Notes: generated by a model from the sequence alone, not told the origin. A DNA stretch of 64,000 nt from IMGVR_UViG_3300037502_003770:124001-188000; one strand, 5' to 3'; numbered from the stretch's first letter, positions 3-64,000 are shown. A program made the numbers and translations.

Positions 3-116
3 TATATTGCAGATGATTTTGAAACATATAATCATGGCAGCCTTTTATATTTTGAATCTAATGGTTTAAAATATTATACCAATCAAAAATTTTTAATTAC
101 TAAAAAAAGAAAATAA
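3..116 (+). CDS. 3' end of hypothetical protein (partial)
   Basis: Open frame YIADDFETYNHG...KKRK* runs in from the window edge and stops just before ORF 119. Confidence 0.6.
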   Translation, partial: YIADDFETYNHGSLLYFESNGLKYYTNQKFLITKKRK

Positions 117-118
117 TA

Positions 119-433
119 ATGAAATACATTTGTTCAGAAACAACTACAGTTTTAGAAAGTCTTCCTTTAATAAAAACAAGGCTTCATATTAATAATGAAA
201 ATGTTGAACATATTTGGATTAAATATGATAAGGCAACAAATAAAATGTGGTTACAAAATAACGCTATTAATTTATATCCTTTTCATAGTTGGGGAATGGA
301 GTTAGATTATTCTTCAAGTTTTGATTTAAACGATACTTTAAATCAAACAGAAATTAAAATTCATCCTGAAACTTTTAAATCAATGATTGTTAAAAATATT
401 ATTGATAATGAAGGAAATCTTATTAAAGAATAA
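119..433 (+). CDS. hypothetical protein
   Basis: 104 aa ORF followed by a terminator. Confidence 0.75.
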   Translation: MKYICSETTTVLESLPLIKTRLHINNENVEHIWIKYDKATNKMWLQNNAINLYPFHSWGMELDYSSSFDLNDTLNQTEIKIHPETFKSMIVKNIIDNEGNLIKE

Positions 434-449
434 AATGATTAAACCCTTT

Positions 450-480
450 AAAACTTATTTCTTTTAGAAATAAGTTTTTT
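450..480 (+). terminator. intrinsic terminator
   Basis: AAAACTTATTTC-tttta-GAAATAAGTTTT followed by a T-run. Confidence 0.75.
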
Positions 481-8903: not shown

Positions 8904-9498
8904 AAAGATTAAATATCTTTTAGAAGTAATTAAACTTAAAGAAATAACTATTTCTAATTGTAATTTTGTTTTAGATTTTTATAATATAAGTGGTTTTGAT
9001 TATAGATGTCCAAAATGGTATGATTTTTTTAATCATAATTATTATAGAAAATCTAACCCTGTTCTTGAAATAAAAATATTTACATCAAAAAAAGAAGTAC
9101 GTTTTAGAATAAAAGATTTACCAAGTATTTTTCGTAATGAAGTAATTACTTGTTATGTTTCTTTTGAAGCATTTTACAAAATCATGGAAAATATGTCTTT
9201 ACTTGATTTACAATTTATTAAAAGAAATCTTTCCAAAATAAAAAATCAACAGATTAAAAAAGATAAAAATAAAATAGTTAACAATATTATAGAAAAAATT
9301 AAATCATATAAAACTTATTTTTGTGTAAATAATGTTTATAATTCAACATTTGAATTTTATGTAAATAAAATTACTGTATTATCAATATCTTTATACATAA
9401 ATGATATACCATATAATTTTAAAGAATTAAAATGGGAACTAAAGAGGTTTCCGTTGCTTGACCTCCAATACATTGATAAAAGATTAACAATTTCTTAA
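8884..9498 (+). CDS. LLDLQ-family paralogue, two fused units
   Basis: MSLLDLQFIK and FPLLDLQYID, each preceded by its own N-helix. Confidence 0.75.
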   Translation: MKNILIEKIKYLLEVIKLKEITISNCNFVLDFYNISGFDYRCPKWYDFFNHNYYRKSNPVLEIKIFTSKKEVRFRIKDLPSIFRNEVITCYVSFEAFYKIMENMSLLDLQFIKRNLSKIKNQQIKKDKNKIVNNIIEKIKSYKTYFCVNNVYNSTFEFYVNKITVLSISLYINDIPYNFKELKWELKRFPLLDLQYIDKRLTIS

Positions 9499-9578
9499 CA
9501 TTGCAGGTATTGACAAACCGAAAAATAGGTTGTACCTTTGTAATGTAATCAATCACGAACCCTTAAACACATACCGAA

Positions 9579-10046
9579 ATGGCAGTAGGAAAAACTTTTG
9601 TCGAAAGTTTAATACATGAACAAAAAGACCTCAGACATAAAATTATATATTCGATAATTGGATATATAAATGATTCACCTCAAAAAAGGATTGAATTTTA
9701 TGGTACAGACCATGATATTAGGTTGAATATTAATCACCCTAATTATACTTCAGCAGTTCACGTAAAATTGCTGGAAATCTCAATGAATCCTAACTATGTA
9801 GTTACTACTAACTTATTTAGTGATTTAGATACTGATAGATATGATTTAGCTGATATTCATCACATTGATAATATTTTATCATTTAAAGTTAAAACTTTAG
9901 ATGATTTAAATCATTATTTAGTTTCTGATGAAGAATTTAGTAATGATTGGGAGAATGAAGATTCACCTTTAAGTTTCAATGATATATTCACAGATGATTT
10001 AATGGAGATATTAAATCGTTTGAGTTTATTAAACGAAACAGAATAA
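9579..10046 (+). CDS. hypothetical acidic protein
   Basis: Follows host-type promoter 9510-9540; terminator at 10063. Confidence 0.75.
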   Translation: MAVGKTFVESLIHEQKDLRHKIIYSIIGYINDSPQKRIEFYGTDHDIRLNINHPNYTSAVHVKLLEISMNPNYVVTTNLFSDLDTDRYDLADIHHIDNILSFKVKTLDDLNHYLVSDEEFSNDWENEDSPLSFNDIFTDDLMEILNRLSLLNETE

Positions 10047-10062
10047 ATATCTCTTTCAAAAG

Positions 10063-10103
10063 AAAATCCCTTTAACAAATAAAGGGATTTTTTATAATAT
10101 AAA
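10063..10103 (+). terminator. terminator hairpin with embedded class II promoter
   Basis: AAAATCCCTTT-aacaaat-AAAGGGATTTT; TTAACA at 10072, N17, TAATATAA. Confidence 0.7.
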
Positions 10104-10112
10104 TAATATATC

Positions 10113-10556
10113 ATGAAAACAACACTTTCCGAAAGAAAAGAATTACTTATTAAAGAAATAATATCTTTAATAAAAAACTTTGATTATTCAAAAATACATA
10201 ATTCAAGATGGAAGGGTATTCATTTTGTTGAAATTGATTATAATTTATCCGAAAGAGATACGTTTAAAATAAAATTAAATGATTTATTTAATATTCGTTA
10301 TAATTATTTTGAAAGAGAATATTATTTATATTGTATTGAATGTAAAGAAGATTTTTCATTTTTCATGAAGGAAAATAAATATAGAGAAGAAAGAAAATAT
10401 AAAATTTGGTACTACACTATAGAACCATATAAATCTGGAGAAGAACATCATTCAACCACTCTAACAATAAGACAATTTAAAAAGTTATTTAATAAAATGT
10501 GTTTACTTGAGTTATTTAGTATTAAGTTAAAAATAAAAAAATTAGGAAGTAAATAA
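10113..10556 (+). CDS. LLDLQ-family paralogue
   Basis: RKELLIKEII ... MCLLELFSIK. Confidence 0.75.
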   Translation: MKTTLSERKELLIKEIISLIKNFDYSKIHNSRWKGIHFVEIDYNLSERDTFKIKLNDLFNIRYNYFEREYYLYCIECKEDFSFFMKENKYREERKYKIWYYTIEPYKSGEEHHSTTLTIRQFKKLFNKMCLLELFSIKLKIKKLGSK

Positions 10557-10988: not shown

Positions 10989-11741
10989 ATGTTAACCACA
11001 ATTGCACAGCCAAGCTTCTTAAAACTAGATTCTGACCTATTCTTGCCAGTATTTTATGTTAGTACTGAAGCAAATCCTACATATATGGATTTTTATCCTG
11101 AAATAATTAATTTCTTTTCAAGAAAATTACTTTTCTCAAAAAAAGAATTATTAAATCATATTGATTATGAAGATAATTATAAACTTCATAATCAAGATAT
11201 TCCTTTAGATAATAAAGGTTTCAGGAAACTTATTCTGAAAGGAATAAGAGAAGCTAGGGAATTAGAATCATATCAAAATCATATTTTCTATATTCATTTG
11301 AGAATAAAAGATGAAAGTTTTGAACCGAATCCTATACCTCATAAATTGTATATTGAAAATTTTGGCAACGAAAATATTGGTAATCGTTATGAAGTAACCT
11401 TTAATTTAACTTATCAAGATAGAGATATTAGTGAAGATATTTCTATTGTAAGAGCAGCTTTTCATAATATTGAAAACAATGAAAGAGTTACTAAAATTAA
11501 AGTTGTTAAACACTTTGATTTACCAATTAAATCACAAAAGTTTTTAATTTCAACAGAAAATAAAAATACAGGTTTAGTTCTTTATGTAGCTGGTAGTGAT
11601 AAACATAAATTCTTTCACTCAAGCAGTATAGACCAAGCAAGAAGATATACTCAAAAAGAAATAGATAAATTTCTCGATAAAGATATTCACTTTAAAGAAA
11701 AGTTTACTATTACAAAAGATTTCAACTCAATAAAATTTTAA
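10989..11741 (+). CDS. hypothetical protein (start moved to ATG 10989)
   Basis: The track's TTG start at 10923 is the TTGACA of its own promoter. Confidence 0.7.
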   Translation: MLTTIAQPSFLKLDSDLFLPVFYVSTEANPTYMDFYPEIINFFSRKLLFSKKELLNHIDYEDNYKLHNQDIPLDNKGFRKLILKGIREARELESYQNHIFYIHLRIKDESFEPNPIPHKLYIENFGNENIGNRYEVTFNLTYQDRDISEDISIVRAAFHNIENNERVTKIKVVKHFDLPIKSQKFLISTENKNTGLVLYVAGSDKHKFFHSSSIDQARRYTQKEIDKFLDKDIHFKEKFTITKDFNSIKF

Positions 11742-11745
11742 CCTT

Positions 11746-11922
11746 ATGGCAGAATTCCCTGAACACTTAATTAAATGGTTTAATAAAATAGATAGAGAAA
11801 ATAAACTTCATATTGAAATGAAGAATAAAAAATATGTGTTGTATTTTAATCGAAAAGATAAAAAACTTCAACCGATAACTCAATTTATTAAACTAACCAA
11901 AAAACACAGACGTAAATACTAA
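11746..11922 (+). CDS. small basic protein (58 aa, not in track)
   Basis: MAEFPEHLIKWFNKIDRENK...HRRKY*; fills the gap in an operon. Confidence 0.55.
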   Translation: MAEFPEHLIKWFNKIDRENKLHIEMKNKKYVLYFNRKDKKLQPITQFIKLTKKHRRKY

Positions 11923-11940
11923 ACAAAACATCTTTCAAAC

Positions 11941-12390
11941 ATGAAAAAATTAAAAAAAGAACTAATCTCTTCTTTAAATAATGATTTTACTTTAAAGGTA
12001 GTAGATTTTCTACAAGATGATGTAAATAAGATTTCTTTTTTAAGAAATTCTTTAAACTTAGATAAACTTGAATCTTACAAGTTTTGCAATACCCATCGAG
12101 GTTTAACATTATCTTTTCAAAAAAGACTTAATGATTTACCGATGACAATTCATATTGGAGTTAAAAGAATAGGTAAACCAAAACAATATGAACCTAATAA
12201 TTTTCATTATGAATTGAGGATTTATCATCGACATTTACATTTTGAAGATGAAAGATTAATCGAAACTTGTAAAAGAATTAAACGTTCTAAACATAGTCCG
12301 TATCATTATTATACAGTAAAAAAGCACCCTTATCTTGGTGCAACTCTTGAATCTTCAATAGAACGATTCTTAACTGAGTTAATAAAGTAA
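11941..12390 (+). CDS. hypothetical protein
   Basis: 149 aa ORF before a terminator. Confidence 0.7.
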   Translation: MKKLKKELISSLNNDFTLKVVDFLQDDVNKISFLRNSLNLDKLESYKFCNTHRGLTLSFQKRLNDLPMTIHIGVKRIGKPKQYEPNNFHYELRIYHRHLHFEDERLIETCKRIKRSKHSPYHYYTVKKHPYLGATLESSIERFLTELIK

Positions 12391-12395
12391 AATAA

Positions 12396-12451
12396 TTCTT
12401 TCCTTAAAAACCTTTCATTCTTAACAAATGAAAGGTTTTTTTGTATATAAT
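12396..12451 (+). repeat. ~55 bp terminator/class II promoter unit, duplicated at 19482-19536
   Basis: TTCTTTCCTTAAAAACCTTTCATTCTTAACAAATGAAAGGTTTTTTTGTATATAA in both places. Confidence 0.85.
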
Positions 12452-19410: not shown

Positions 19411-19542
19411 TACAACATGGAGAAAATCCTGATTTTAATATCAATAAAATAAGCCTTGAATTGAACCCTCAATAAAACAATTTCTTTCCTTAAAAACCTT
19501 TCATTCTTAACAAATGAAAGGTTTTTTTGTATATAAAATAGT

Positions 19543-31461: not shown

Positions 31462-31938
31462 AATATCCTTACCTCAATATAAAACCTATCTTTTTTAAAG
31501 ATAGGTTTTTTTATATCCTTACTTTATCCTGATACCTACCTTAGTTCTCTATATAGTCTTATTAACGTTTTAAAGCCTCGTTAAGCTACTCTAAATACTA
31601 AATGATAGTTTGATACCTTTATACTATCCTGATGCCTTAAAGATACCTTTATGTAAGGAATAGAACTACCTACCTAGATAACCTTACTTAGTTGTGAAGT
31701 AGTAACCCTATATAAATAGCTTTATTTCTTTAAGTAAAGCAGTTTTAAAGGTTCCTGATTAGTGGTAAAGTAATTTACTATTAAAATAGCTTAGGTTCGC
31801 TTAGAGAGGCTTTATATAGGTTCCTGATACCCTAGAAAAAAAGTTTACTGAAAATTTGGATATATGAAAATAAAGTATTAACTTTGCAGTAGTTAAAGCA
31901 ATCAAGCTTTAATCATAACCAATAAACCTGATTCCCTT

Positions 31939-55250: not shown

Positions 55251-55837
55251 TGAAGAATATTGATAAGGTTAGTGATAGAAATCAAATAGATTTACTTTCT
55301 TTAAATAAATTCTTTATTGAGAAAGGGGATGATGAATTAGAATATTTATTATGGAATAATCAACTTATAGATACTAATTATTCAAATGAACGTATACAAA
55401 ATTATATTATAAAAAGATTTCAACCTAATGAAATAAAGAATGAGTTTTATTTATCATATAAATTTTGTGAAAAAATAGTTACTAAAGATGGTATGGCTTT
55501 AATGTATGTACCCGAACATTTAAAAGATTATAATCTTTGTGAGAAAGCTGTTAATAATGAACCATATGCTATACATTTTATACCAAAAACAATAGAAAAT
55601 TACTATGAATTAGTAAAAATTGTTTTTAAATTAGCAGTTAAATGGAAATTAAAAGAGTCTGAAATTTTTAAATATATATCAAGAGATGATTTAATACAAT
55701 TAAAAAAAGATTTTCCAGAACATATAGATTTTTTTGATGAGCTTAACTTAAAAGAATATATTTCCAAAGAAGTAAGAAAATTATTAAAAGAACAAATTTT
55801 TAAAAATAAAAACTATTTAATTAAAAATATAAAATAA
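55250..55837 (+). CDS. DUF4116-like repeat protein with C-terminal tag
   Basis: QIDLLSLNKFFIEKGD ... LKEYISKEVRKLLKE. Confidence 0.75.
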   Translation: MKNIDKVSDRNQIDLLSLNKFFIEKGDDELEYLLWNNQLIDTNYSNERIQNYIIKRFQPNEIKNEFYLSYKFCEKIVTKDGMALMYVPEHLKDYNLCEKAVNNEPYAIHFIPKTIENYYELVKIVFKLAVKWKLKESEIFKYISRDDLIQLKKDFPEHIDFFDELNLKEYISKEVRKLLKEQIFKNKNYLIKNIK

Positions 55838-58236
55838 TGAATATTAAGAAATATTTAGAAGGTAAATCAATTACAGAAGCCGAATATAAAGGAAGAAAAG
55901 TAAGTTTAAATAAACCTTTCAGAACACCAGGCGGACCTAAGAAATTTAGTGTGTATGTTAAAAATGAAAAAGATAATGTAGTTAAAGTTAATTTTGGAGA
56001 CCCAAATATGAGGATTAAAAGAAATTCCCCTGAAAGAAGAAAAAGTTTTAGAGCAAGACACAAATGTGATACACCAGGTCCAAAAACAAAAGCAAGATAT
56101 TGGAGTTGTCAAGCAGGTTGGAATAAAACAAAATCTGTAAAGGATTTAATTAAGGAAGAATATAAAAGTAAATCATCTCATTTTAGATGGGAAGATACTT
56201 ATAAGAGTGAAGAACAGGCTTGTAGTGATTATATGGCTGGTGTTAATTCTTCAAGTGGGACTATACAAATAGTAGACCCAAAAATTTCTTGTTATTATGA
56301 ATTATGTAAAATATCAGTTTCAAAAAATTGGTCAAATTTAAAATTTATATCAGGTGCTTATCTTGAAAATTATGATGATATATGTTTAATTGCTATTAAA
56401 CAAGATGAGAGTGCTTTTCGTTTTATTGAAATTAAATTTGTTAAATCTAATAATTTAAAACAAATGTATAACGAATATCATCAGAAATATTTAGATAGAG
56501 AAACAACTTGGGATAATAGTACTAAAGAAGATTATAGGAATTATTACGGATTAAATAATATTAATGAAAGTAAAACTTCAATTAAAAAAATAATTACTGA
56601 AGAAATACTAAAACAATTAAAAGAAAATACTCAAACAAAAGAATATGAAAATCATTTAAAAGATAAATTAAGAAAAAATGGTTTAGCTTTACAGGATGTA
56701 CCAAAAGATATTATTAATTATGATTTATTATGTAAGATAGCTCTTACACAAAATGGTCATGCTATTCAATTTATAGACCCTTCAAACGAATCATATTATC
56801 AGTTTTGTCAAATTGCAATTAGACAAAATCCTTATTCAATATCTTTAATTGATGAAAATAGTTTTTCTGAAAAAGAACTTTATTTCCGTCTTTGTGAAAG
56901 AGCTTATTTAATTAATCCTGATGTAATTAAATCTATTCCGCAAGAATATCAAGAGAAATTAAAAACTTCTTTTAATAATCCAGAATATAGAAAAGAAAAA
57001 GAAAATCAATTTCCTCAATCTGGTGATATTATGGAATCAGATGACCTTCAAGAAGGTTGGAGAGATAATATAACAAAAGTATTAGCTGGTTTGTCTTTAA
57101 TTACAACTTTAAATACAGGTGTTTCTTTTGCAAAAGGTGGTGAAAAAGATAGGGCTGTTAAAGAATATATTTCAAAGAAATTTACTGGGAATATTGAAGA
57201 TGTTGCTGGCTATACAAAAGGTGGTTATCCTGTTTATAAAAAAGATTCTCCTTCAGCAAAAGAATTCAATGCTAAATATAATAATGCTATTGAAAATAAA
57301 ATTCCTTCTTTTGAATATAACGGTTTTACTTATCAAGTAAATAATAATAGTAGGGAAAAATTAGATATTTTAGGTATTGCTCAATTAGGTCTTAAAACCG
57401 ATTTAAAACAACCTGAAATTAGTAATAAGCGTTATGATGTACCAGCTGTTAAAAGTGTCTCTGAGCCTGAAAGTGGGGGTAATTCAGTAGATAATAGTAA
57501 GAGTACAAACATATCCAAATTTAATAAGAATAAAATTTATGATTTATCGGCAGAAATAAATAATAATATTCGTAATAGTGATAATGAATGGTTTGAATTA
57601 CCTGATGATTATATGAAGTATTTAAAATCGTATGGTAAAGAAATCCAATCAACTTACAACGTTAAAGGTTTAAGAGATACAAAAACAAATAAGATTTATT
57701 TAGCTTTACCAAAAACTAAAGAAGGTGTTAATTCATACATACAAATATTTAAAAAATATATTTTACCAAAAATGAAAGGTATTGAAGCCGTTAAAACTTT
57801 AGATGGTAAAGTTGTTTCAGTACAAGATTTCTTAGGTGGTCAATTAAATGAATTATTGTTATTTAATAAAGATGCAAGGAAAAAAGGTTTTGACGCTGAA
57901 CAAGAAAAATATAAAGATAATCCAAACGCTATTCATTATAAATCAGAACCTCAACCCACAGCAAAATATAAACCTAAAACAAATTCAATATACGATGTAG
58001 TGGATAGTAAAAAATTAAAAGAGGAAAATGAGTCTAATAATTATGTAAAAGAAATTTTATATAGACATAAACGTGGTAATAAATGGCATGAATTACCATT
58101 ATTTCTACATGGTAAACCTATGAATCTTACATATGAAAAAGCATTAAAATATGTTGAAGAAAATTTTGGCGTTTTTAAAGTTATTAATAAAAATATTTTA
58201 AAAAGTCAAGATGATATAATTAAAATAAAATTCTAA
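55837..58236 (+). CDS. multi-module protein: basic RRKSFRARH(K/N)C domain, DUF4116-like modules and others, separated by x-x-E sites
   Basis: ITEAEYKGRKVSLNKP...FGDPNM..RRKSFRARHKC..KARYWSC; LIKEE, INES..ITEE..LKEN, LQEG, LNE, LKEE. Confidence 0.7.
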   Translation: MNIKKYLEGKSITEAEYKGRKVSLNKPFRTPGGPKKFSVYVKNEKDNVVKVNFGDPNMRIKRNSPERRKSFRARHKCDTPGPKTKARYWSCQAGWNKTKSVKDLIKEEYKSKSSHFRWEDTYKSEEQACSDYMAGVNSSSGTIQIVDPKISCYYELCKISVSKNWSNLKFISGAYLENYDDICLIAIKQDESAFRFIEIKFVKSNNLKQMYNEYHQKYLDRETTWDNSTKEDYRNYYGLNNINESKTSIKKIITEEILKQLKENTQTKEYENHLKDKLRKNGLALQDVPKDIINYDLLCKIALTQNGHAIQFIDPSNESYYQFCQIAIRQNPYSISLIDENSFSEKELYFRLCERAYLINPDVIKSIPQEYQEKLKTSFNNPEYRKEKENQFPQSGDIMESDDLQEGWRDNITKVLAGLSLITTLNTGVSFAKGGEKDRAVKEYISKKFTGNIEDVAGYTKGGYPVYKKDSPSAKEFNAKYNNAIENKIPSFEYNGFTYQVNNNSREKLDILGIAQLGLKTDLKQPEISNKRYDVPAVKSVSEPESGGNSVDNSKSTNISKFNKNKIYDLSAEINNNIRNSDNEWFELPDDYMKYLKSYGKEIQSTYNVKGLRDTKTNKIYLALPKTKEGVNSYIQIFKKYILPKMKGIEAVKTLDGKVVSVQDFLGGQLNELLLFNKDARKKGFDAEQEKYKDNPNAIHYKSEPQPTAKYKPKTNSIYDVVDSKKLKEENESNNYVKEILYRHKRGNKWHELPLFLHGKPMNLTYEKALKYVEENFGVFKVINKNILKSQDDIIKIKF

Positions 58237-58862: not shown

Positions 58863-58953
58863 ACTTTTATATTAAAAATAATTTACAATAAAAAAGCATA
58901 TATTCGTAAAAAATATATGCTTTTACTATTTAATAAAAAATATTGTACATACA

Positions 58954-60165: not shown

Positions 60166-60594
60166 ATGGATATAACATTATTACTTAGTATACTAGGTCC
60201 GATTATCTTGAGTGAGAGTATTACTTATTTTAAGGTTATACCTGAATTAAAGGGTAAAATAATTTCTTTAGAAGAAAAAACTTTAAACTTGGAAGCTGAA
60301 TATAAAAGTAATACAGATAACAGTAATGAATCAACTAAAGAATTAGTTAAAATTACAGAGAAGTTAGAAAACTTAGAAAAATCTAACAACGAACAAAAAC
60401 AAGAGAATAAAGAGTTATCTAAAATTGTTACAAAATTTGAAAATTTAGAAAAAAATTTTGACGAGCAAAAAAAAGAGAATAAAGAATTATATAAAGAAAT
60501 GCAAAAAACTTTAGAATTAAATACTTTAGCAATTGGTAAATTAGATACTACTTTAAAGAATTTAGAAAAAATGATTGATAGAACAAATAGTTAA
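60166..60594 (+). CDS. membrane-anchored coiled-coil protein
   Basis: Hydrophobic N-terminus, internal repeat (T/N)KELxKIxxKxENLEK. Confidence 0.65.
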   Translation: MDITLLLSILGPIILSESITYFKVIPELKGKIISLEEKTLNLEAEYKSNTDNSNESTKELVKITEKLENLEKSNNEQKQENKELSKIVTKFENLEKNFDEQKKENKELYKEMQKTLELNTLAIGKLDTTLKNLEKMIDRTNS

Positions 60595-61006
60595 TTTATT
60601 TATGAATGATTTATATTTAATATATGTTAAGGATTGTGGGGAAAATTTTAGAAAGGAAAGACTTTATGAATTTATTTTCTCCACAAAACCTGACGAAGCT
60701 ACAGGTGTTAACTGGCATTTAACATGTAAATATGGTGGGGTTGAACCTCCAGCTGATGAATTTATTGATTTTGTTTTAAAAGTTGAAATACCTGAATCAG
60801 AATTTACTTTAGAATTATTAGAAAATAGTACTGAATTTACATATTTTGATGGTGTTTATAATATTGTTGCTTTAGCTTGGGAATATATTGAAGACTATAA
60901 AGTATTTAATTTTGATAAGAAATTAACTGTATTTAAATACAGGGATTCATTAGAAAATATTAAAGAAATATTAGAAGATAAAGAAATAAATTTTTTAGAA
61001 TATTAA
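60575..61006 (+). CDS. hypothetical acidic protein (ATG at 60602 likely)
   Basis: ORF track. Confidence 0.7.
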   Translation: MIEQIVNLFMNDLYLIYVKDCGENFRKERLYEFIFSTKPDEATGVNWHLTCKYGGVEPPADEFIDFVLKVEIPESEFTLELLENSTEFTYFDGVYNIVALAWEYIEDYKVFNFDKKLTVFKYRDSLENIKEILEDKEINFLEY

Positions 61007-61061
61007 GATAATTACATTAAAATAATAAAAATCTCTATTTATAATAAAATAGAGATTTTTT

Positions 61062-62408
61062 ATGAAAAAACCAAAAATGTTAAAAAAAGCAGTAGAAGGA
61101 AGAGAAGATGCTACTGATATGATTGTACCTGATTATGTGTACACAGATAATGGGATTGAATTTGTAGATAGTATAAATTCTTTTCAGTATAATAATAAAG
61201 AGTATAAATTAAAAGAATTAACTGGTACTAGTTATAACGTACAATTTAGTATATCAAGATATATGAAAGTTGAACCTGATTTTGTATTTCATATATATGA
61301 TTTACAAACAAGAGAATTTACTTATAGAAAAGCTAAAGATTTAAAACTAGGTGATTATGTAATTCATAAAGACGAAATAAAACCTTATGTAAATAAAAAT
61401 AATAAAATAAATAAACTTTTTATTTTAGAAAAAGACTTTCTTTATTTTTATGGTTTAACTCTTAGAAATTTAGATAAATTAAATAAAAAAAACAATGACT
61501 TTGTAATTAAAAGAATTGGTAGATTTTCGTATATAGATGATATATTAAATAAAATAGACCCTGATTTTAAACATGATTCAATAAGTGATAAATTTACAGT
61601 AACACACCCTAGATTTAGAAAATTATTTAAAAGATTTCATATTAATTATAATGATAAAGTTTTAAAGGAATGGTTATTTACTTTAGATAAAGAAGCTATT
61701 ATAGATTTTTTAAGCGGTTACGCAGAAGGTCATATTAAAATAAGTGAATTTGATGGTGGATTAATGTCAACTAGTAATAATTTAGACAATATGTTAAAAA
61801 TTGCTTTACTTTTTAGACTAGTTGGTATTGAATGTACTGTTTTATCAAGACCTAGAAGACATTATAAGGGGAGATTAGATTTTCAATACTATCATAAATT
61901 TACAAGTGAAGGTGTTCAAAACTTTTATAATATAATTAAATTTAAAATACCTTCTAATAAAAAGAAGATAAGTAGAAGACCTAGAAAATTAGATAGGTCA
62001 ACAATTTTACCTGATATATTTTATCAAATACAAAAAGGTTTAGAACCAACAGATAAAAATATTTTAAGACCTATATTTCATGGTTATAGTAAACATAAAT
62101 GGTTTAAAGCTTTATATGGTTATAGTGCAAATATACAAAAAGCTTTAACTAGAAATTCATTTAAAAAAATATATTATGAACAGTTTTTACAACCTAATTT
62201 AGATAAAATAACTCTTTCTCAAGAATTTAAATCTAATTTAGAAAAATATTATTTAAGTGAAGAATACTCATTTATGGAAGTATCAAAAATAAGAATAAAA
62301 GAAAATGATGTATGGAAAAAAGTAGATAATGACGAACCATATTCATTTAGTGAATTTAGTTATATAGATTATATAGAAGAATGGAAGAAATTGCAAATAA
62401 AAAATTAA
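61062..62408 (+). CDS. free-standing degenerate intein (HINT) plus LAGLIDADG-like protein
   Basis: VYTDNG..I, KAKDLKLGDYV (HINT-N), FYGLTLRN and FLSGYAEG (LAGLIDADG-like), LLFRLVGIEC, FMEVSKIRI (HINT-C); no Cys1, block-B His or terminal HN. Confidence 0.6.
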   Translation: MKKPKMLKKAVEGREDATDMIVPDYVYTDNGIEFVDSINSFQYNNKEYKLKELTGTSYNVQFSISRYMKVEPDFVFHIYDLQTREFTYRKAKDLKLGDYVIHKDEIKPYVNKNNKINKLFILEKDFLYFYGLTLRNLDKLNKKNNDFVIKRIGRFSYIDDILNKIDPDFKHDSISDKFTVTHPRFRKLFKRFHINYNDKVLKEWLFTLDKEAIIDFLSGYAEGHIKISEFDGGLMSTSNNLDNMLKIALLFRLVGIECTVLSRPRRHYKGRLDFQYYHKFTSEGVQNFYNIIKFKIPSNKKKISRRPRKLDRSTILPDIFYQIQKGLEPTDKNILRPIFHGYSKHKWFKALYGYSANIQKALTRNSFKKIYYEQFLQPNLDKITLSQEFKSNLEKYYLSEEYSFMEVSKIRIKENDVWKKVDNDEPYSFSEFSYIDYIEEWKKLQIKN

Positions 62409-64000
62409 CAAAAGCTCAGATTACTGAAGAATTTATAAAAATTTCTTTGGATATAGAATATTTCGCTTTAAATTATTGTAAAGTAAAAGATAAAGCTAAA
62501 GGTGTTATAGGTCCTTTTAAAGTTATGCCTACACAAAAAAAGGTTTTAAAAGCTTATATGGAAAATGATTATGTAGGTGTTTTAAAATATAGGCAAGGAG
62601 GTATTACAACAGTAACTATTTTATATGTGTGTTGGTTAATTTGTACTCAAAATGATTTAAAAATTGCTATTGTTGCTGATAAACTTAAATTATCAATAAC
62701 AGATATTGTAATGCCAATACATAATATGTTAATGGATTTACCAGAGTGGCTTAGACCCACTTTATCAATCGATAGACAAGAGTTAAAACAATATAGTAAT
62801 GGATGTGTGCTAAAAGCAGTTGCAGCTTCTAAAGACGGTTTAAGAGGTATGTCTCCTGATTATTTAATAATTGATGAAGCAGCTTATTTACAATATGGTG
62901 AAGCATTTTGGACATCAGCATCAGGTACATTATCTGTCGCAGGGAAATGTATTATGATTTCAACACCTAATGGTCAAGACCCTGTTTATTTTGCTCAATA
63001 TGAAGCATCAAGAATAGGTGAAAGCGGATTTCATTTTGTGGAAATTAAATGGTATGAAGATATAAGATTTAATAAAGGGTTAGTTTGGAAACAAGGTAAT
63101 GAAATTATGGTTGAAGGTGAGGAAGCATTAGATGAAACAAAATTTAATGAATATATACAACTAGGTTATAAAGCTTCTTCTCCTTGGTATGTTACTATGT
63201 GTAAAACTTATTTTGGTGATAAAAAACGTATTGCTCAAGAAATTGAAAATAGTTTTATTGGTTCAGGTGGTGCAATGATACATGATGAAGATTTAATTAG
63301 ACATGAAAGAATTGCAAAAACTTTTCCATTTAGAGAATTAAATAGAGAACCGAATTTATGGATTTTTGAAGACCCTATTCCAACAGAAGATTATGTATTA
63401 TCAGCTGACGTTGCATCTGGAGGAGAAGATTATTCAACTTTTCAGATAGTTAGAATAGATAAAGTTTCAGGAAAATTAATTCAAGTTGCAGAATATCAAA
63501 ATAAAGTAAAAAATGATGTTTTAGCTCCAACTGTTTTTGAATTTGGTAGATTATATAATTTTGCTTATCTTGTTGTCGATGTTACAGGTTCACATGGTTT
63601 ACCTTTAGTTGAAAGATTAATAGAATTAAAATATCCTAACCTTCATTATAGTGATTATTCAACATCAGCTATTTCTGAAAGAATAGAAGGTTTAGAAAGT
63701 TTTGATGGTAAAAAACCTGGTTTTATTGTAGGGGGTGGTCAAATTAGACAATTAATATTGGCTAAATTTGAAGAAATGGTAAGACTTGATACTTTACAAA
63801 TTAGGTCAGTTAGATTAATTTCAGAAATGAAAACATTTGTATGGATGCCTTCAAAAAATAGATATGACCACACAAGAACTAAACACGATGACTTATTATT
63901 TGCTATGGCAATAGCTTGTTATGTTGTTGAATATTCTATTATTAAAAGTAAAAATAATAAAGAAGGTGTTAAAAATATGTTGGATAGTTGGACTTTTGTT
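62381..64000 (+). CDS. terL: terminase large subunit, T4 gp17-like (partial, runs off the window; not in track)
   Basis: MEEIANKKL...; adenine motif PTQ, Walker A KYRQGGITT, Walker B LIIDEAAY, coupling motif ISTPNG, nuclease ADVASG..DYS and HDDLLFA. Confidence 0.92.
   Translation, partial: MEEIANKKLTKAQITEEFIKISLDIEYFALNYCKVKDKAKGVIGPFKVMPTQKKVLKAYMENDYVGVLKYRQGGITTVTILYVCWLICTQNDLKIAIVADKLKLSITDIVMPIHNMLMDLPEWLRPTLSIDRQELKQYSNGCVLKAVAASKDGLRGMSPDYLIIDEAAYLQYGEAFWTSASGTLSVAGKCIMISTPNGQDPVYFAQYEASRIGESGFHFVEIKWYEDIRFNKGLVWKQGNEIMVEGEEALDETKFNEYIQLGYKASSPWYVTMCKTYFGDKKRIAQEIENSFIGSGGAMIHDEDLIRHERIAKTFPFRELNREPNLWIFEDPIPTEDYVLSADVASGGEDYSTFQIVRIDKVSGKLIQVAEYQNKVKNDVLAPTVFEFGRLYNFAYLVVDVTGSHGLPLVERLIELKYPNLHYSDYSTSAISERIEGLESFDGKKPGFIVGGGQIRQLILAKFEEMVRLDTLQIRSVRLISEMKTFVWMPSKNRYDHTRTKHDDLLFAMAIACYVVEYSIIKSKNNKEGVKNMLDSWTFV

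What the first reader, a model, noticed from the sequence alone, without database searches (positions are those of the whole stretch)
61062..62408. Free-standing, apparently dead intein/homing endonuclease overlapping the terminase gene
The 448 aa ORF has full intein layout (HINT-N, two LAGLIDADG-like helices, HINT-C) but almost no extein. It lacks Cys/Ser1, the block-B TxxH His (reads VEPDF), the terminal His-Asn, and the catalytic acids of both LAGLIDADG motifs (YGLTLRNL, LSGYAEGHI). The frame is nonetheless intact, has its own CTATTTA promoter and overlaps the terL start by 28 bp, where a small terminase often lies. Inference: a domesticated intein used as a DNA-binding packaging or regulatory factor; WhiA and yeast HO are precedents for domestication.
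Basis: partly seen in the sequence, partly recalled or inferred. Interest (0 to 1): 0.7.

Follow-up and report, generated by a model that had tools for sequence, protein, structure and literature searches.

The report
Extein-less, catalytically stripped intein beside terL
A freshwater jumbo phage carries, just upstream of its DNA-packaging motor gene, a stand-alone gene descended from an intein homing endonuclease that has lost its protein-splicing residues and probably its DNA-cutting residues, yet is kept intact by selection, so it probably now works as a DNA-binding protein rather than as a selfish element.

Summary
The ORF is real: 61062-62408 on the + strand, 448 aa, overlapping the terL start by 28 nt. 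It has no detectable sequence relatives outside one phage clade.

Four lines of evidence point to an intein-plus-LAGLIDADG layout:
- protein-language and predicted-structure neighbours;
- sub-threshold Pfam hits, in the right order, in both orthologues;
- structure matches to LAGLIDADG enzymes for residues 207-309 (Z up to 9.5);
- alignment to real inteins.

All splicing residues are missing. Position 8 of both LAGLIDADG motifs is non-acidic (N136, H224).

The gene is not decaying. Between two clades dN/dS is about 0.24, similar to terL, and it is lowest in the LAGLIDADG domains. dS matches the flanking genes. The gene is present in every close relative.

It is absent from the sister clade, where the neighbouring 145-aa gene sits 11 nt from terL. 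So it is an insertion, not a universal packaging subunit.

It has its own copy of a promoter-like motif that is 15-fold enriched upstream of genes genome-wide. That copy lies inside a conserved terminator-like hairpin, and terL has no copy of its own.

Best reading: a fixed, domesticated intein-derived DNA-binding protein, extein-less like yeast HO/WHO and catalytically stripped like WhiA, co-expressed with TerL. A small-terminase role is unsupported. An active nuclease is not excluded.

The parts
60575..61006 (+). Conserved 143-aa acidic gene (g143), the left flank of the insertion. In the sister clade its orthologue abuts terL. It is a positional TerS candidate only.
   Evidence: 39% identical to L012:5552-5986, E 3e-29. 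Synteny. No family hit. pI 4.3.
61027..61060 (.). Perfect 14-bp stem-loop with an A-run before and a T-run after. It looks like a bidirectional terminator. Its 3' arm holds the likely ribosome-binding site (AGAGA) of ORF448.
   Evidence: RNA fold -13 kcal/mol, z -4.64. Almost invariant across both clades. Belongs to a genome-wide class of AAAA-stem-TTTT hairpins.
61035..61041 (+). Promoter-like motif CTATTTA, 27 nt before the ATG, inside the 5' arm of the hairpin.
   Evidence: The motif is 15-fold enriched within 60 nt upstream of genes. ACTATTTA is 18-fold and TCTATTTA 8.5-fold enriched. The commonest distance to the ATG is 26 nt.
61062..62408 (+). ORF448: a free-standing intein-derived protein, basic (pI 9.4), with a single Cys.
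61116..61415 (+). HINT-N-like part (residues 19-118). Block A lacks the nucleophile (D19). Block B reads E71..F74 in place of TxxH. The AKDLKxGD segment resembles real inteins.
   Evidence: Pfam Intein_splicing E 0.047-0.074. MAFFT alignment with five inteins. omega 0.37-0.42.
61416..61676 (+). Putative first LAGLIDADG domain (residues 119-205). Motif FYGLTLRNL at 61446-61472, with N136 at position 8 and L137 at position 9.
   Evidence: Placed by sequence pattern only. The AF2 model is unreliable here. N136 is invariant. omega 0.16-0.18.
61677..61961 (+). Second LAGLIDADG domain (residues 206-300). Motif LSGYAEGHI at 61710-61736, with H224 at position 8 and I225 at position 9.
   Evidence: VIA-align: I-DmoI Z 9.5, PI-PfuI Z 9.1 (rmsd 2.5 A over 96 aa), WhiA Z 8.7. 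Pfam LAGLIDADG_3 on residues 215-292. omega 0.17-0.18.
61962..62261 (+). Conserved, strongly basic (net +11) helical region (residues 301-400) of unknown fold. It may be an added DNA-binding module.
   Evidence: Helices predicted. No fold or family match. omega 0.18-0.21. Charge.
62262..62372 (+). HINT-C-like part (residues 401-437). It shows a block F-like pattern but has no terminal His-Asn (Y437-I438).
   Evidence: Alignment with five inteins. Beta strands predicted at 411-420.
62381..64000 (+). terL (580 aa in full; it runs 124 nt past the window). It overlaps ORF448 by 28 nt and has no CTATTTA motif of its own.
   Evidence: PHROG 2 E 7.6e-30, Pfam Terminase_6N. Full gene. Motif map.

Best explanation
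ORF448 descends from an intein with a LAGLIDADG homing endonuclease. It now stands alone as a gene between a conserved 143-aa gene and terL, in one clade of freshwater T4-like jumbo phages.

**Shown**
- It is an insertion relative to the sister clade.
- It has no usable exteins and none of the four splicing residues.
- It has been inherited vertically with its flanks and is under purifying selection in every domain, strongest in the LAGLIDADG core.
- Its upstream region carries a copy of the phage's gene-proximal promoter-like motif, embedded in a conserved terminator-like hairpin.
- It overlaps the terL start in both clades.

**Inferred**
- The two metal-binding acids of the nuclease site are replaced by Asn136 and His224, and the following glycines by Leu and Ile. 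The protein therefore no longer cuts DNA.
- It still uses the basic LAGLIDADG saddle and a basic helical module to bind a specific DNA site.
- It is made together with TerL from one late transcript. Transcripts that start at the promoter inside the hairpin would leave the ribosome-binding site free. Read-through transcripts from upstream would terminate or bury that site.

**Most likely role**
A site-specific DNA-binding factor of the terL operon. My rough split is:
- regulator of its own promoter/hairpin region, in the manner of I-TevI or WhiA: 0.3
- accessory to terminase, as the HNH protein of HK97 is: 0.2
- something else: the remainder

It is not a replacement for the small terminase.
For: **Existence and limits of homology:**

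**Fold:**

**Lost splicing residues:**

**Motif positions.** The alignment ranges I-DmoI 101..186, PI-PfuI 233..334 and I-CreI 5..111 against model 207-209 onward put H224 at the penultimate motif position. PMC3384342 names that position as the metal-binding acid (E117 in I-DmoI). N136 and H224 are invariant in 7 sequences.

**Selection.** omega is 0.23-0.26 between clades, against 0.19-0.23 for terL. Within clades it is 0.03-0.13. dS is 0.68-0.76, against 0.49-0.57 for terL. Per domain, the LAGLIDADG domains have omega 0.16-0.18.

**Synteny.** The ORF is present in all close relatives. It is absent in three sister-clade contigs with homologous flanks.

**Promoter and hairpin:**

**Charge.** pI 9.4, with net charge +6, +3 and +11 on the LAGLIDADG-1, LAGLIDADG-2 and helical parts.

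**Precedents.** HO and WHO proteins are extein-less and lack motif G (PMC7282813). WhiA lacks the catalytic acids (PMC3384342). The HK97 HNH protein upstream of terminase cooperates with it (PMC10448857).
Against: - No confident 3D model exists (pLDDT 34 and 39.6). Only residues 207-309 have a solid structural match, so the first LAGLIDADG domain and the HINT fold rest on weak evidence.
- The Pfam hits are below the curated cut-offs. hhalign against five inteins was not significant.
- E222-G223, two residues before H224, could serve as the acid if the helix is two residues shorter than in known enzymes. D138 lies two residues after N136.
- Purifying selection is also expected for an active homing endonuclease.
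- DNA binding, timing of expression and any target are untested. No RNA data were found.
Confidence: 0.55

Rival explanations
1. It is still an active, free-standing homing endonuclease gene. It cuts, or nicks, the g143-terL junction or the terL 5' region of related phages that lack it, and spreads by recombinational repair during co-infection (intronless homing, as in T4 seg/mob genes and yeast WHO elements).
For: - It sits next to an essential, conserved gene, and the region upstream of terminase is a known hot spot for such genes (PMC10448857).
- It is present in one clade and absent in the sister clade, with otherwise identical flanks.
- It has its own promoter motif and terminator, as mobile cassettes often do.
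- It is under purifying selection.
- Related TerL proteins carry inteins at two sites, so the locus is exposed to such elements.
- E222 or D138 might serve as a displaced acid.
Against: - N136 and H224 occupy the two metal-binding positions, and bulky L137 and I225 replace the glycines.
- No relative with TerL at least 81% identical lacks it.
- Its dS is equal to or above that of its flanks, so there is no sign of recent transfer between clades.
Confidence: 0.2
2. It has taken over the small-terminase role. It would recognise the packaging start site and recruit or stimulate TerL.
For: - It holds the position directly upstream of terL and is translationally coupled to it in both clades.
- It is a basic protein.
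- No recognisable TerS was found in the genome.
- A precedent exists for a nuclease-like protein helping terminase in HK97.
Against: - The sister clade packages without it. There the conserved 145-aa gene is adjacent to terL, and that gene is also kept here.
- TerS proteins are often too divergent for profiles to detect, so failing to find one says little.
- There is no evidence of oligomerisation or of contact with TerL.
Confidence: 0.1
3. It is a decaying remnant with no function of its own. The frame would be kept open only because the region carries the promoter and the translational coupling needed for terL.
For: - The catalytic residues for both activities are gone.
- terL has no promoter motif of its own.
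Against: - omega is 0.16-0.42 in every domain across 1.3 kb. There are no stops or frameshifts in 7 sequences from two clades separated by dS of about 0.7.
- Constraint on expression signals would not hold amino-acid sequence along the whole protein.
Confidence: 0.05
4. ORF448 and TerL are made as one fusion protein by a programmed frameshift, or the ORF is a true intein of terL split off by an assembly error.
For: - The two frames overlap.
- TerL is the commonest intein host in phages.
Against: - terL lies in frame +2 relative to the ORF here (28-nt overlap) but in frame +1 in the other clade (14-nt overlap).
- The same arrangement appears in independent assemblies.
- TerL aligns from its first residues with intein-free relatives.
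- There is no +1 nucleophile and no splicing residues.
Confidence: 0.02

Closest known systems
Yeast HO endonuclease and WHO elements (PMC7282813)
   Same: - Free-standing genes derived from an intein with a LAGLIDADG domain.
- No exteins and no motif G (terminal His-Asn).
- WHO genes sit beside the conserved gene they target. HO is a domesticated member.
   Different: - HO and WHO proteins are active nucleases and carry a C-terminal zinc finger. ORF448 has one Cys, no zinc finger, a basic helical insert instead, and non-acidic residues at both catalytic positions.
- No sequence homology was detected.
- The host is a phage rather than a yeast.
WhiA/DUF199 (PMC3384342)
   Same: - A LAGLIDADG scaffold that has lost the catalytic acids and serves as a regulator.
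- An extra helical DNA-binding module follows the scaffold.
- It is a structural match to residues 208-309 (Z 8.7).
   Different: - WhiA has no HINT parts and is a conserved bacterial gene.
- Pfam LAGLIDADG_WhiA did not match.
- The helical region of ORF448 was not recognised as a helix-turn-helix.
Inteins with LAGLIDADG endonucleases in phage TerL and other genes (e.g. PI-PfuI, PI-SceI; TerL relatives P0091, P0100)
   Same: - Domain order HINT-N, two LAGLIDADG domains, HINT-C, over about 420 aa.
- The best Foldseek hit is PI-PfuI.
- The Atlas structure neighbours are such inteins, including ones in TerL.
   Different: - It is not inserted in a host protein.
- Blocks A, B and G lack their catalytic residues, so it cannot splice.
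Free-standing phage homing endonuclease genes near terminase, and the HK97 HNH protein that cooperates with terminase (PMC10448857)
   Same: - A nuclease-family gene inserted directly upstream of terL, with its own expression signals.
- It could be selfish, domesticated or both.
   Different: - Those are mostly HNH, GIY-YIG or T5orf172 proteins with intact motifs.
- This one is LAGLIDADG with intein remnants and lacks the catalytic acids.

Membership tests
Intein (protein-splicing element) | Inserted in frame within a host protein, with N- and C-exteins | tested here: not met
   About 18 residues precede block A and 10 follow block F/G. terL is in another frame, and in different frames in the two clades.
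Intein (protein-splicing element) | Block A nucleophile (Cys/Ser/Thr at position 1) | tested here: not met
   The position aligns with D19, or E19 in the other clade.
Intein (protein-splicing element) | Block B TxxH | tested here: not met
   Reads E71-P-D-F74, or D-G-E-F in the other clade.
Intein (protein-splicing element) | Block G His-Asn followed by a +1 nucleophile | tested here: not met
   Aligned positions are Y437-I438 (Y-K in the other clade). The terminal N448 lies in an unconserved tail.
Intein (protein-splicing element) | HINT fold formed by the N- and C-terminal parts | tested here: inconclusive
   Pfam Intein_splicing E 0.047-0.074, below the cut-off. Atlas TM 0.54-0.61 to intein-bearing proteins over residues 21-417 or beyond. 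The AF2 model is unreliable here. hhalign was not significant.
LAGLIDADG homing endonuclease | [quoted passage not shown] | tested here: inconclusive
   The second domain is met (Z 9.5/9.1 on residues 207-309; Pfam LAGLIDADG_3). The first domain rests on sequence pattern and Atlas alignments only.
LAGLIDADG homing endonuclease | Acidic residue at the penultimate position of each motif | tested here: not met
   N136 and H224, invariant in 7 sequences. Caveat: the register comes from a low-confidence model and the motif pattern.
LAGLIDADG homing endonuclease | Site-specific DNA cleavage and mobility (patchy distribution, tree conflict) | not testable with these tools
   The only pattern seen is presence in one clade and absence in its sister. 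There are no empty sites among close relatives.
HO/WHO family | Extein-less intein-like region lacking motif G | tested here: met
   The feature is as defined in PMC7282813.
HO/WHO family | C-terminal zinc finger with repeated CxxC; sequence homology to HO | tested here: not met
   One Cys in the whole protein. No homologues outside the phage clade.
WhiA/DUF199 | Degenerate LAGLIDADG scaffold plus C-terminal helix-turn-helix; family profile match | tested here: not met
   Only a fold-level match (Z 8.7). No Pfam WhiA hit. The helical region was not assigned to any fold.
Small terminase (TerS) | Family profile match, and conservation as the partner of TerL across related phages | tested here: not met
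   No PF11053 or PF03592 match in the genome. No PHROG hit. The ORF is absent from the sister clade with the same flanks.

The most novel reading that the evidence does not exclude
A phage has turned an intein homing endonuclease into a nuclease-dead, sequence-specific DNA-binding subunit of its packaging operon. For example, it could mark the packaging start site for TerL, or shield the terL locus from the active endonucleases of co-infecting relatives. That would be a phage counterpart of the domestication of HO and WhiA.
Probability: 0.15. Interest if true: 0.8.

Novelty: new variant of a known kind. Interest (0 to 1): 0.55.

Why it matters
- Extein-less inteins are known from yeast (HO and WHO). 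I found no report of one in a phage in the paper library.
- This case shows the later part of a homing element's life cycle in a virus: insertion beside an essential gene, loss of both catalytic activities, then retention under selection and wiring into the host operon.
- If its DNA target were found, it would give a testable example of how phages recruit selfish nucleases as regulators or packaging factors.
- It would also provide a natural, cleavage-dead LAGLIDADG scaffold with an extra basic DNA-binding module.

Tried and rejected
**Sequence searches that found no relatives**
- Whole-protein Pfam, PHROGs and PDB sequence searches: nothing relevant.
- tblastn against phage records: no match.
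- Three large protein searches found only the two close clusters. No deep alignment could therefore be built.

**Structure prediction and profile comparison**
- AlphaFold2 failed on the single sequence and on the 7-sequence alignment (pLDDT 34.1 and 39.6).
- Only residues 207-309 of the second model gave usable matches. Foldseek found nothing at E 0.001 or better.
- hhalign of the family against five real inteins: E 0.15, not significant.
- Pfam Hom_end and Hom_end_hint: no match in the genome.
- Atlas search of the helical region 297-405: no usable hit.

**The neighbouring gene g143 as TerS**
- Atlas and PHROGs searches of the 143/145-aa neighbour gave nothing.

**Related loci and related inteins**
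- The search for related loci with TerL in viral contigs: nothing.
- The Staphylococcus phage helicase intein, fetched as a canonical comparator, turned out to have a degenerate endonuclease domain.
- The portal intein was rejected as the source of ORF448. Its long form in a relative carries a different, HNH-like insert.

**Promoter motifs**
- A window-only test of CTATTTATA (7 found, 5.5 expected) wrongly suggested there was no motif. The genome-wide, strand-aware test reversed that result.
- The T4 late promoter TATAAATA is not enriched in the window.

**Reads and expression**
- No RNA runs hold the sequence.

**Not run**
- Complex prediction with TerL. I do not claim binding, and ORF448 cannot be modelled.

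**Readings rejected**
- A frameshift fusion with TerL, because the relative frame differs between the clades.
- A chance ORF.

Full report
**Setting.** The window is bases 124001-188000 of a 312,694-bp virus record with about 22% G+C. It is a T4-like jumbo phage. It has a TerL of the T4 type and a gp20-type portal. Near-identical sequence occurs in subsurface, freshwater and lake metagenomes.

**The observation.**
- The ORF at 61062..62408 (+) is 448 aa, and terL starts at 62381, so the two overlap by 28 nt.
- From the window's base composition, an open frame of this length has a chance probability of about 8e-21.
- The whole protein matches no Pfam, PHROG or PDB sequence.
- Three very large protein searches found only two close clusters, 443-448 aa and 444 aa, 72% identical to each other.

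**Is it an intein/LAGLIDADG derivative?** Several weak lines of evidence agree.
- The ESM Atlas holds the sequence. Its nearest clusters by language-model features are LAGLIDADG_3 and Intein_splicing families.
- Its nearest predicted structures are all intein-bearing proteins, TerL among them (TM 0.54-0.61 over 296-343 residues, covering residues 21-417 or more).
- Pfam run on pieces gives Intein_splicing on residues 19-118 (E 0.047-0.074) and LAGLIDADG_3 across its whole profile on residues 215-292 (E 0.008-0.098). Both appear in both orthologues and in the expected order. These hits are below Pfam's cut-offs, but they are exactly the families predicted beforehand.
- AlphaFold2 gave poor models (pLDDT 34.1 and 39.6). 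Even so, the 7-sequence model has moderate confidence over residues 210-296.
- An exhaustive structural comparison against 48,161 PDB chains put LAGLIDADG proteins in the first 18 places for residues 207-309. The top hits were I-DmoI (Z 9.5), PI-PfuI (Z 9.1, rmsd 2.5 A over 96 residues), WhiA (Z 8.7), I-Vdi141I, the TliVMA intein, I-MsoI and I-CreI.
- The best Foldseek hit was the intein endonuclease PI-PfuI (E 0.015, probability 0.90).
- An alignment of the N- and C-terminal parts with five real inteins shows residual blocks A, B and F. These inteins were this genome's portal intein, three TerL inteins of relatives and a Staphylococcus phage helicase intein. The ORF has a strikingly intein-like AKDLKxGD segment after block B.
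- A profile-profile comparison with those five inteins was not significant.
- I regard the second LAGLIDADG domain as established, the overall intein layout as probable, and the first LAGLIDADG domain as plausible.

**Catalytic residues.**
- In the alignment with real inteins, Cys1 corresponds to D19 (E19 in the other clade), TxxH to E/D71...F74, and His-Asn to Y437-I/K438.
- About 18 residues precede block A and 10 poorly conserved residues follow the last block. Splicing is therefore out of the question.
- For the nuclease, the structural alignment ranges (I-DmoI 101 to model 208, PI-PfuI 233 to 207, I-CreI 5 to 209) place H224 at the penultimate position of the second motif.
- That position holds the metal-binding acid in active enzymes, E117 in I-DmoI (PMC3384342).
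- The motif LSGYAEGHI fits the consensus without gaps. G219 and G223 fall at the small interface positions 3 and 7, E222 at position 6, H224 at position 8 and I225 at position 9.
- The first motif, FYGLTLRNL, has N136 at position 8 and L137 at position 9. This placement is by sequence only.
- All of these residues are invariant in the seven known sequences.
- The caveat is that E222-G223 could act as the acid if the helix were two residues shorter, and that D138 is close to N136. I put loss of nuclease activity at about 65-70%.

**Selection and descent.**
- Codon alignments of five loci give omega 0.23-0.26 between the two clades for ORF448. The comparison values are 0.19-0.23 for terL, 0.16-0.24 for the 143-aa gene and 0.30-0.33 for the 400-aa gene. 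Within clades, omega for ORF448 is 0.03-0.13.
- dS for ORF448 (0.68-0.76) is equal to or slightly above that of its flanks (0.46-0.66). This fits co-divergence and argues against recent transfer.
- By domain, omega is 0.16-0.18 in both LAGLIDADG domains, about 0.2 in the helical region and 0.37-0.42 in HINT-N.
- The protein is basic (pI 9.4). The charge lies on the LAGLIDADG domains (+6, +3) and the helical region (+11), while the neighbouring proteins are acidic.

**Distribution.**
- Every contig with TerL at least 81% identical has the ORF directly upstream of terL and overlapping it, by 28 nt in one clade and 14 nt in the other.
- The next relatives (TerL 44-45% identical; three contigs) have the order 389/404-138-145-terL with homologous flanking genes. 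The 145-aa gene is 39% identical (E 3e-29) and lies 11 nt from terL, with no ORF, hairpin or spacer between them.
- More distant relatives also lack it.
- ORF448, with its upstream hairpin, is therefore a lineage-specific insertion at the g143/terL junction.
- The relative reading frame of terL differs between the clades (+2 against +1), which rules out a conserved frameshift fusion.

**Expression signals.**
- Genome-wide, CTATTTA (fuller form TACTATTTA followed by A or T) occurs within 60 nt upstream of 59 of 354 genes, against 4.0 expected. It lies most often 26 nt before the ATG, and mostly in the structural-gene part of the window.
- ORF448 has a copy 27 nt upstream. terL has none, and the next copy lies after terL.
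- The ORF448 copy sits in the 5' arm of a perfect 14-bp hairpin (61027-61060, z -4.64). The hairpin is flanked by an A-run and a T-run, like more than a dozen terminator-like hairpins between transcription units in this genome.
- This hairpin is nearly invariant across clades whose coding DNA has diverged to a dS of about 0.5-0.7.
- Its 3' arm contains the purine tract that serves as the ribosome-binding site in this phage's usual layout.
- My inference is that transcripts from upstream end here or bury the site, while transcripts that start at the embedded promoter express ORF448 and, by coupling, TerL. This resembles the hairpin and late-promoter arrangement known for some T4 genes (from my own knowledge, not tested here).

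**Interpretation.**
- The data fit an intein-derived element that entered the junction beside terL. The terL locus is exposed to such elements: relatives carry inteins at two terL sites, and the region upstream of terminase is a known hot spot for homing endonuclease genes (PMC10448857).
- The element then became fixed, lost both catalytic functions and has been kept as a protein under selection, wired into the terL transcription unit.
- The closest analogues are yeast HO/WHO, WhiA and the HK97 HNH protein. HO and WHO are extein-less and lack motif G (PMC7282813). WhiA is a LAGLIDADG scaffold without the acids and acts as a regulator (PMC3384342). The HK97 HNH protein cooperates with terminase.
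- ORF448 is not a member of any of these families by the tests listed under membership.
- The small-terminase idea is weakened by the ORF's absence from the sister clade and by the retained 143-aa neighbour, although no TerS could be identified by profiles.
- An active, non-canonical endonuclease remains possible, at about 0.2.

**Limits.** There is no confident structure, no deep alignment, no expression data and no biochemical test.

Noticed in passing
L007:6611-9016 (-), i.e. G000:C1:189611-192016, just beyond the window; compare L008:13930-17217 (-): The portal gene (801 aa) holds a 150-aa mini-intein with Cys1 and block B TPDH. It ends in Gln-Asn followed by Ser. In one close relative the same intein is about 294 aa longer. 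The insert shows an HNH-like motif by eye, which Pfam did not confirm. So a full intein and a mini-intein occupy one site in sister phages.
   Followed up: partly
whole genome; in the window e.g. 32804, 34320, 34926, 37209, 47004, 52428, 53989, 55813, 58926, 61035: The promoter-like motif (T)ACTATTTA(A/T) is 15-18-fold enriched upstream of genes, most often 26 nt before the ATG. It is concentrated in the structural-gene half of the window and nearly absent from the block of small genes at 1-30 kb. It is probably this phage's late promoter.
   Followed up: partly
window 450-478, 10063-10091, 12406-12440, 19492-19526, 31481-31509, 58892-58924, 61027-61060: A class of perfect 12-14-bp hairpins flanked by an A-run and a T-run lies between transcription units and looks like bidirectional terminators. 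The copies at 12406 and 19492 are identical in sequence, as are two copies elsewhere in the genome (108637 and 109477).
   Followed up: partly
window 62585-62611 (TerL residues 69-77): TerL and all its relatives read K-Y-R-Q-G-G-I-T-T in the Walker A region, with no lysine in the usual G-K-T/S position. K69, R71 and Q72 are invariant. This looks like a deviant Walker A with the lysine at its start.
   Followed up: no
proteins P0091, P0100 and P0081 (TerL relatives, 33-38% identical): Related TerL proteins carry inteins at two different sites. P0091 and P0100 have one just before the conserved T-P-x-G motif. P0081 has one after I-A-Q-E-L. The endonuclease domains of the first two are degenerate.
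   Followed up: partly
window 55837-58236; L007:5158-6189, 9128-10399, 11330-12094: Many proteins with DUF4116 repeats are scattered through the structural module. They vary in number and length between close relatives.
   Followed up: no
L007:12916-14001 (-), G000:C1:195915-197000: An ORF of at least 361 aa resembles, by eye, a TnpB/IS200-IS605 OrfB-type protein. It was not tested against any family library.
   Followed up: no
window 60575-61006 and 60166-60594: Two small genes upstream of the insertion are conserved in the sister clade. The 143-aa protein is acidic (pI 4.3) and has no known fold. The 142-aa protein has a hydrophobic N-terminus and a coiled coil. Either could be the unrecognised small terminase.
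   Followed up: partly
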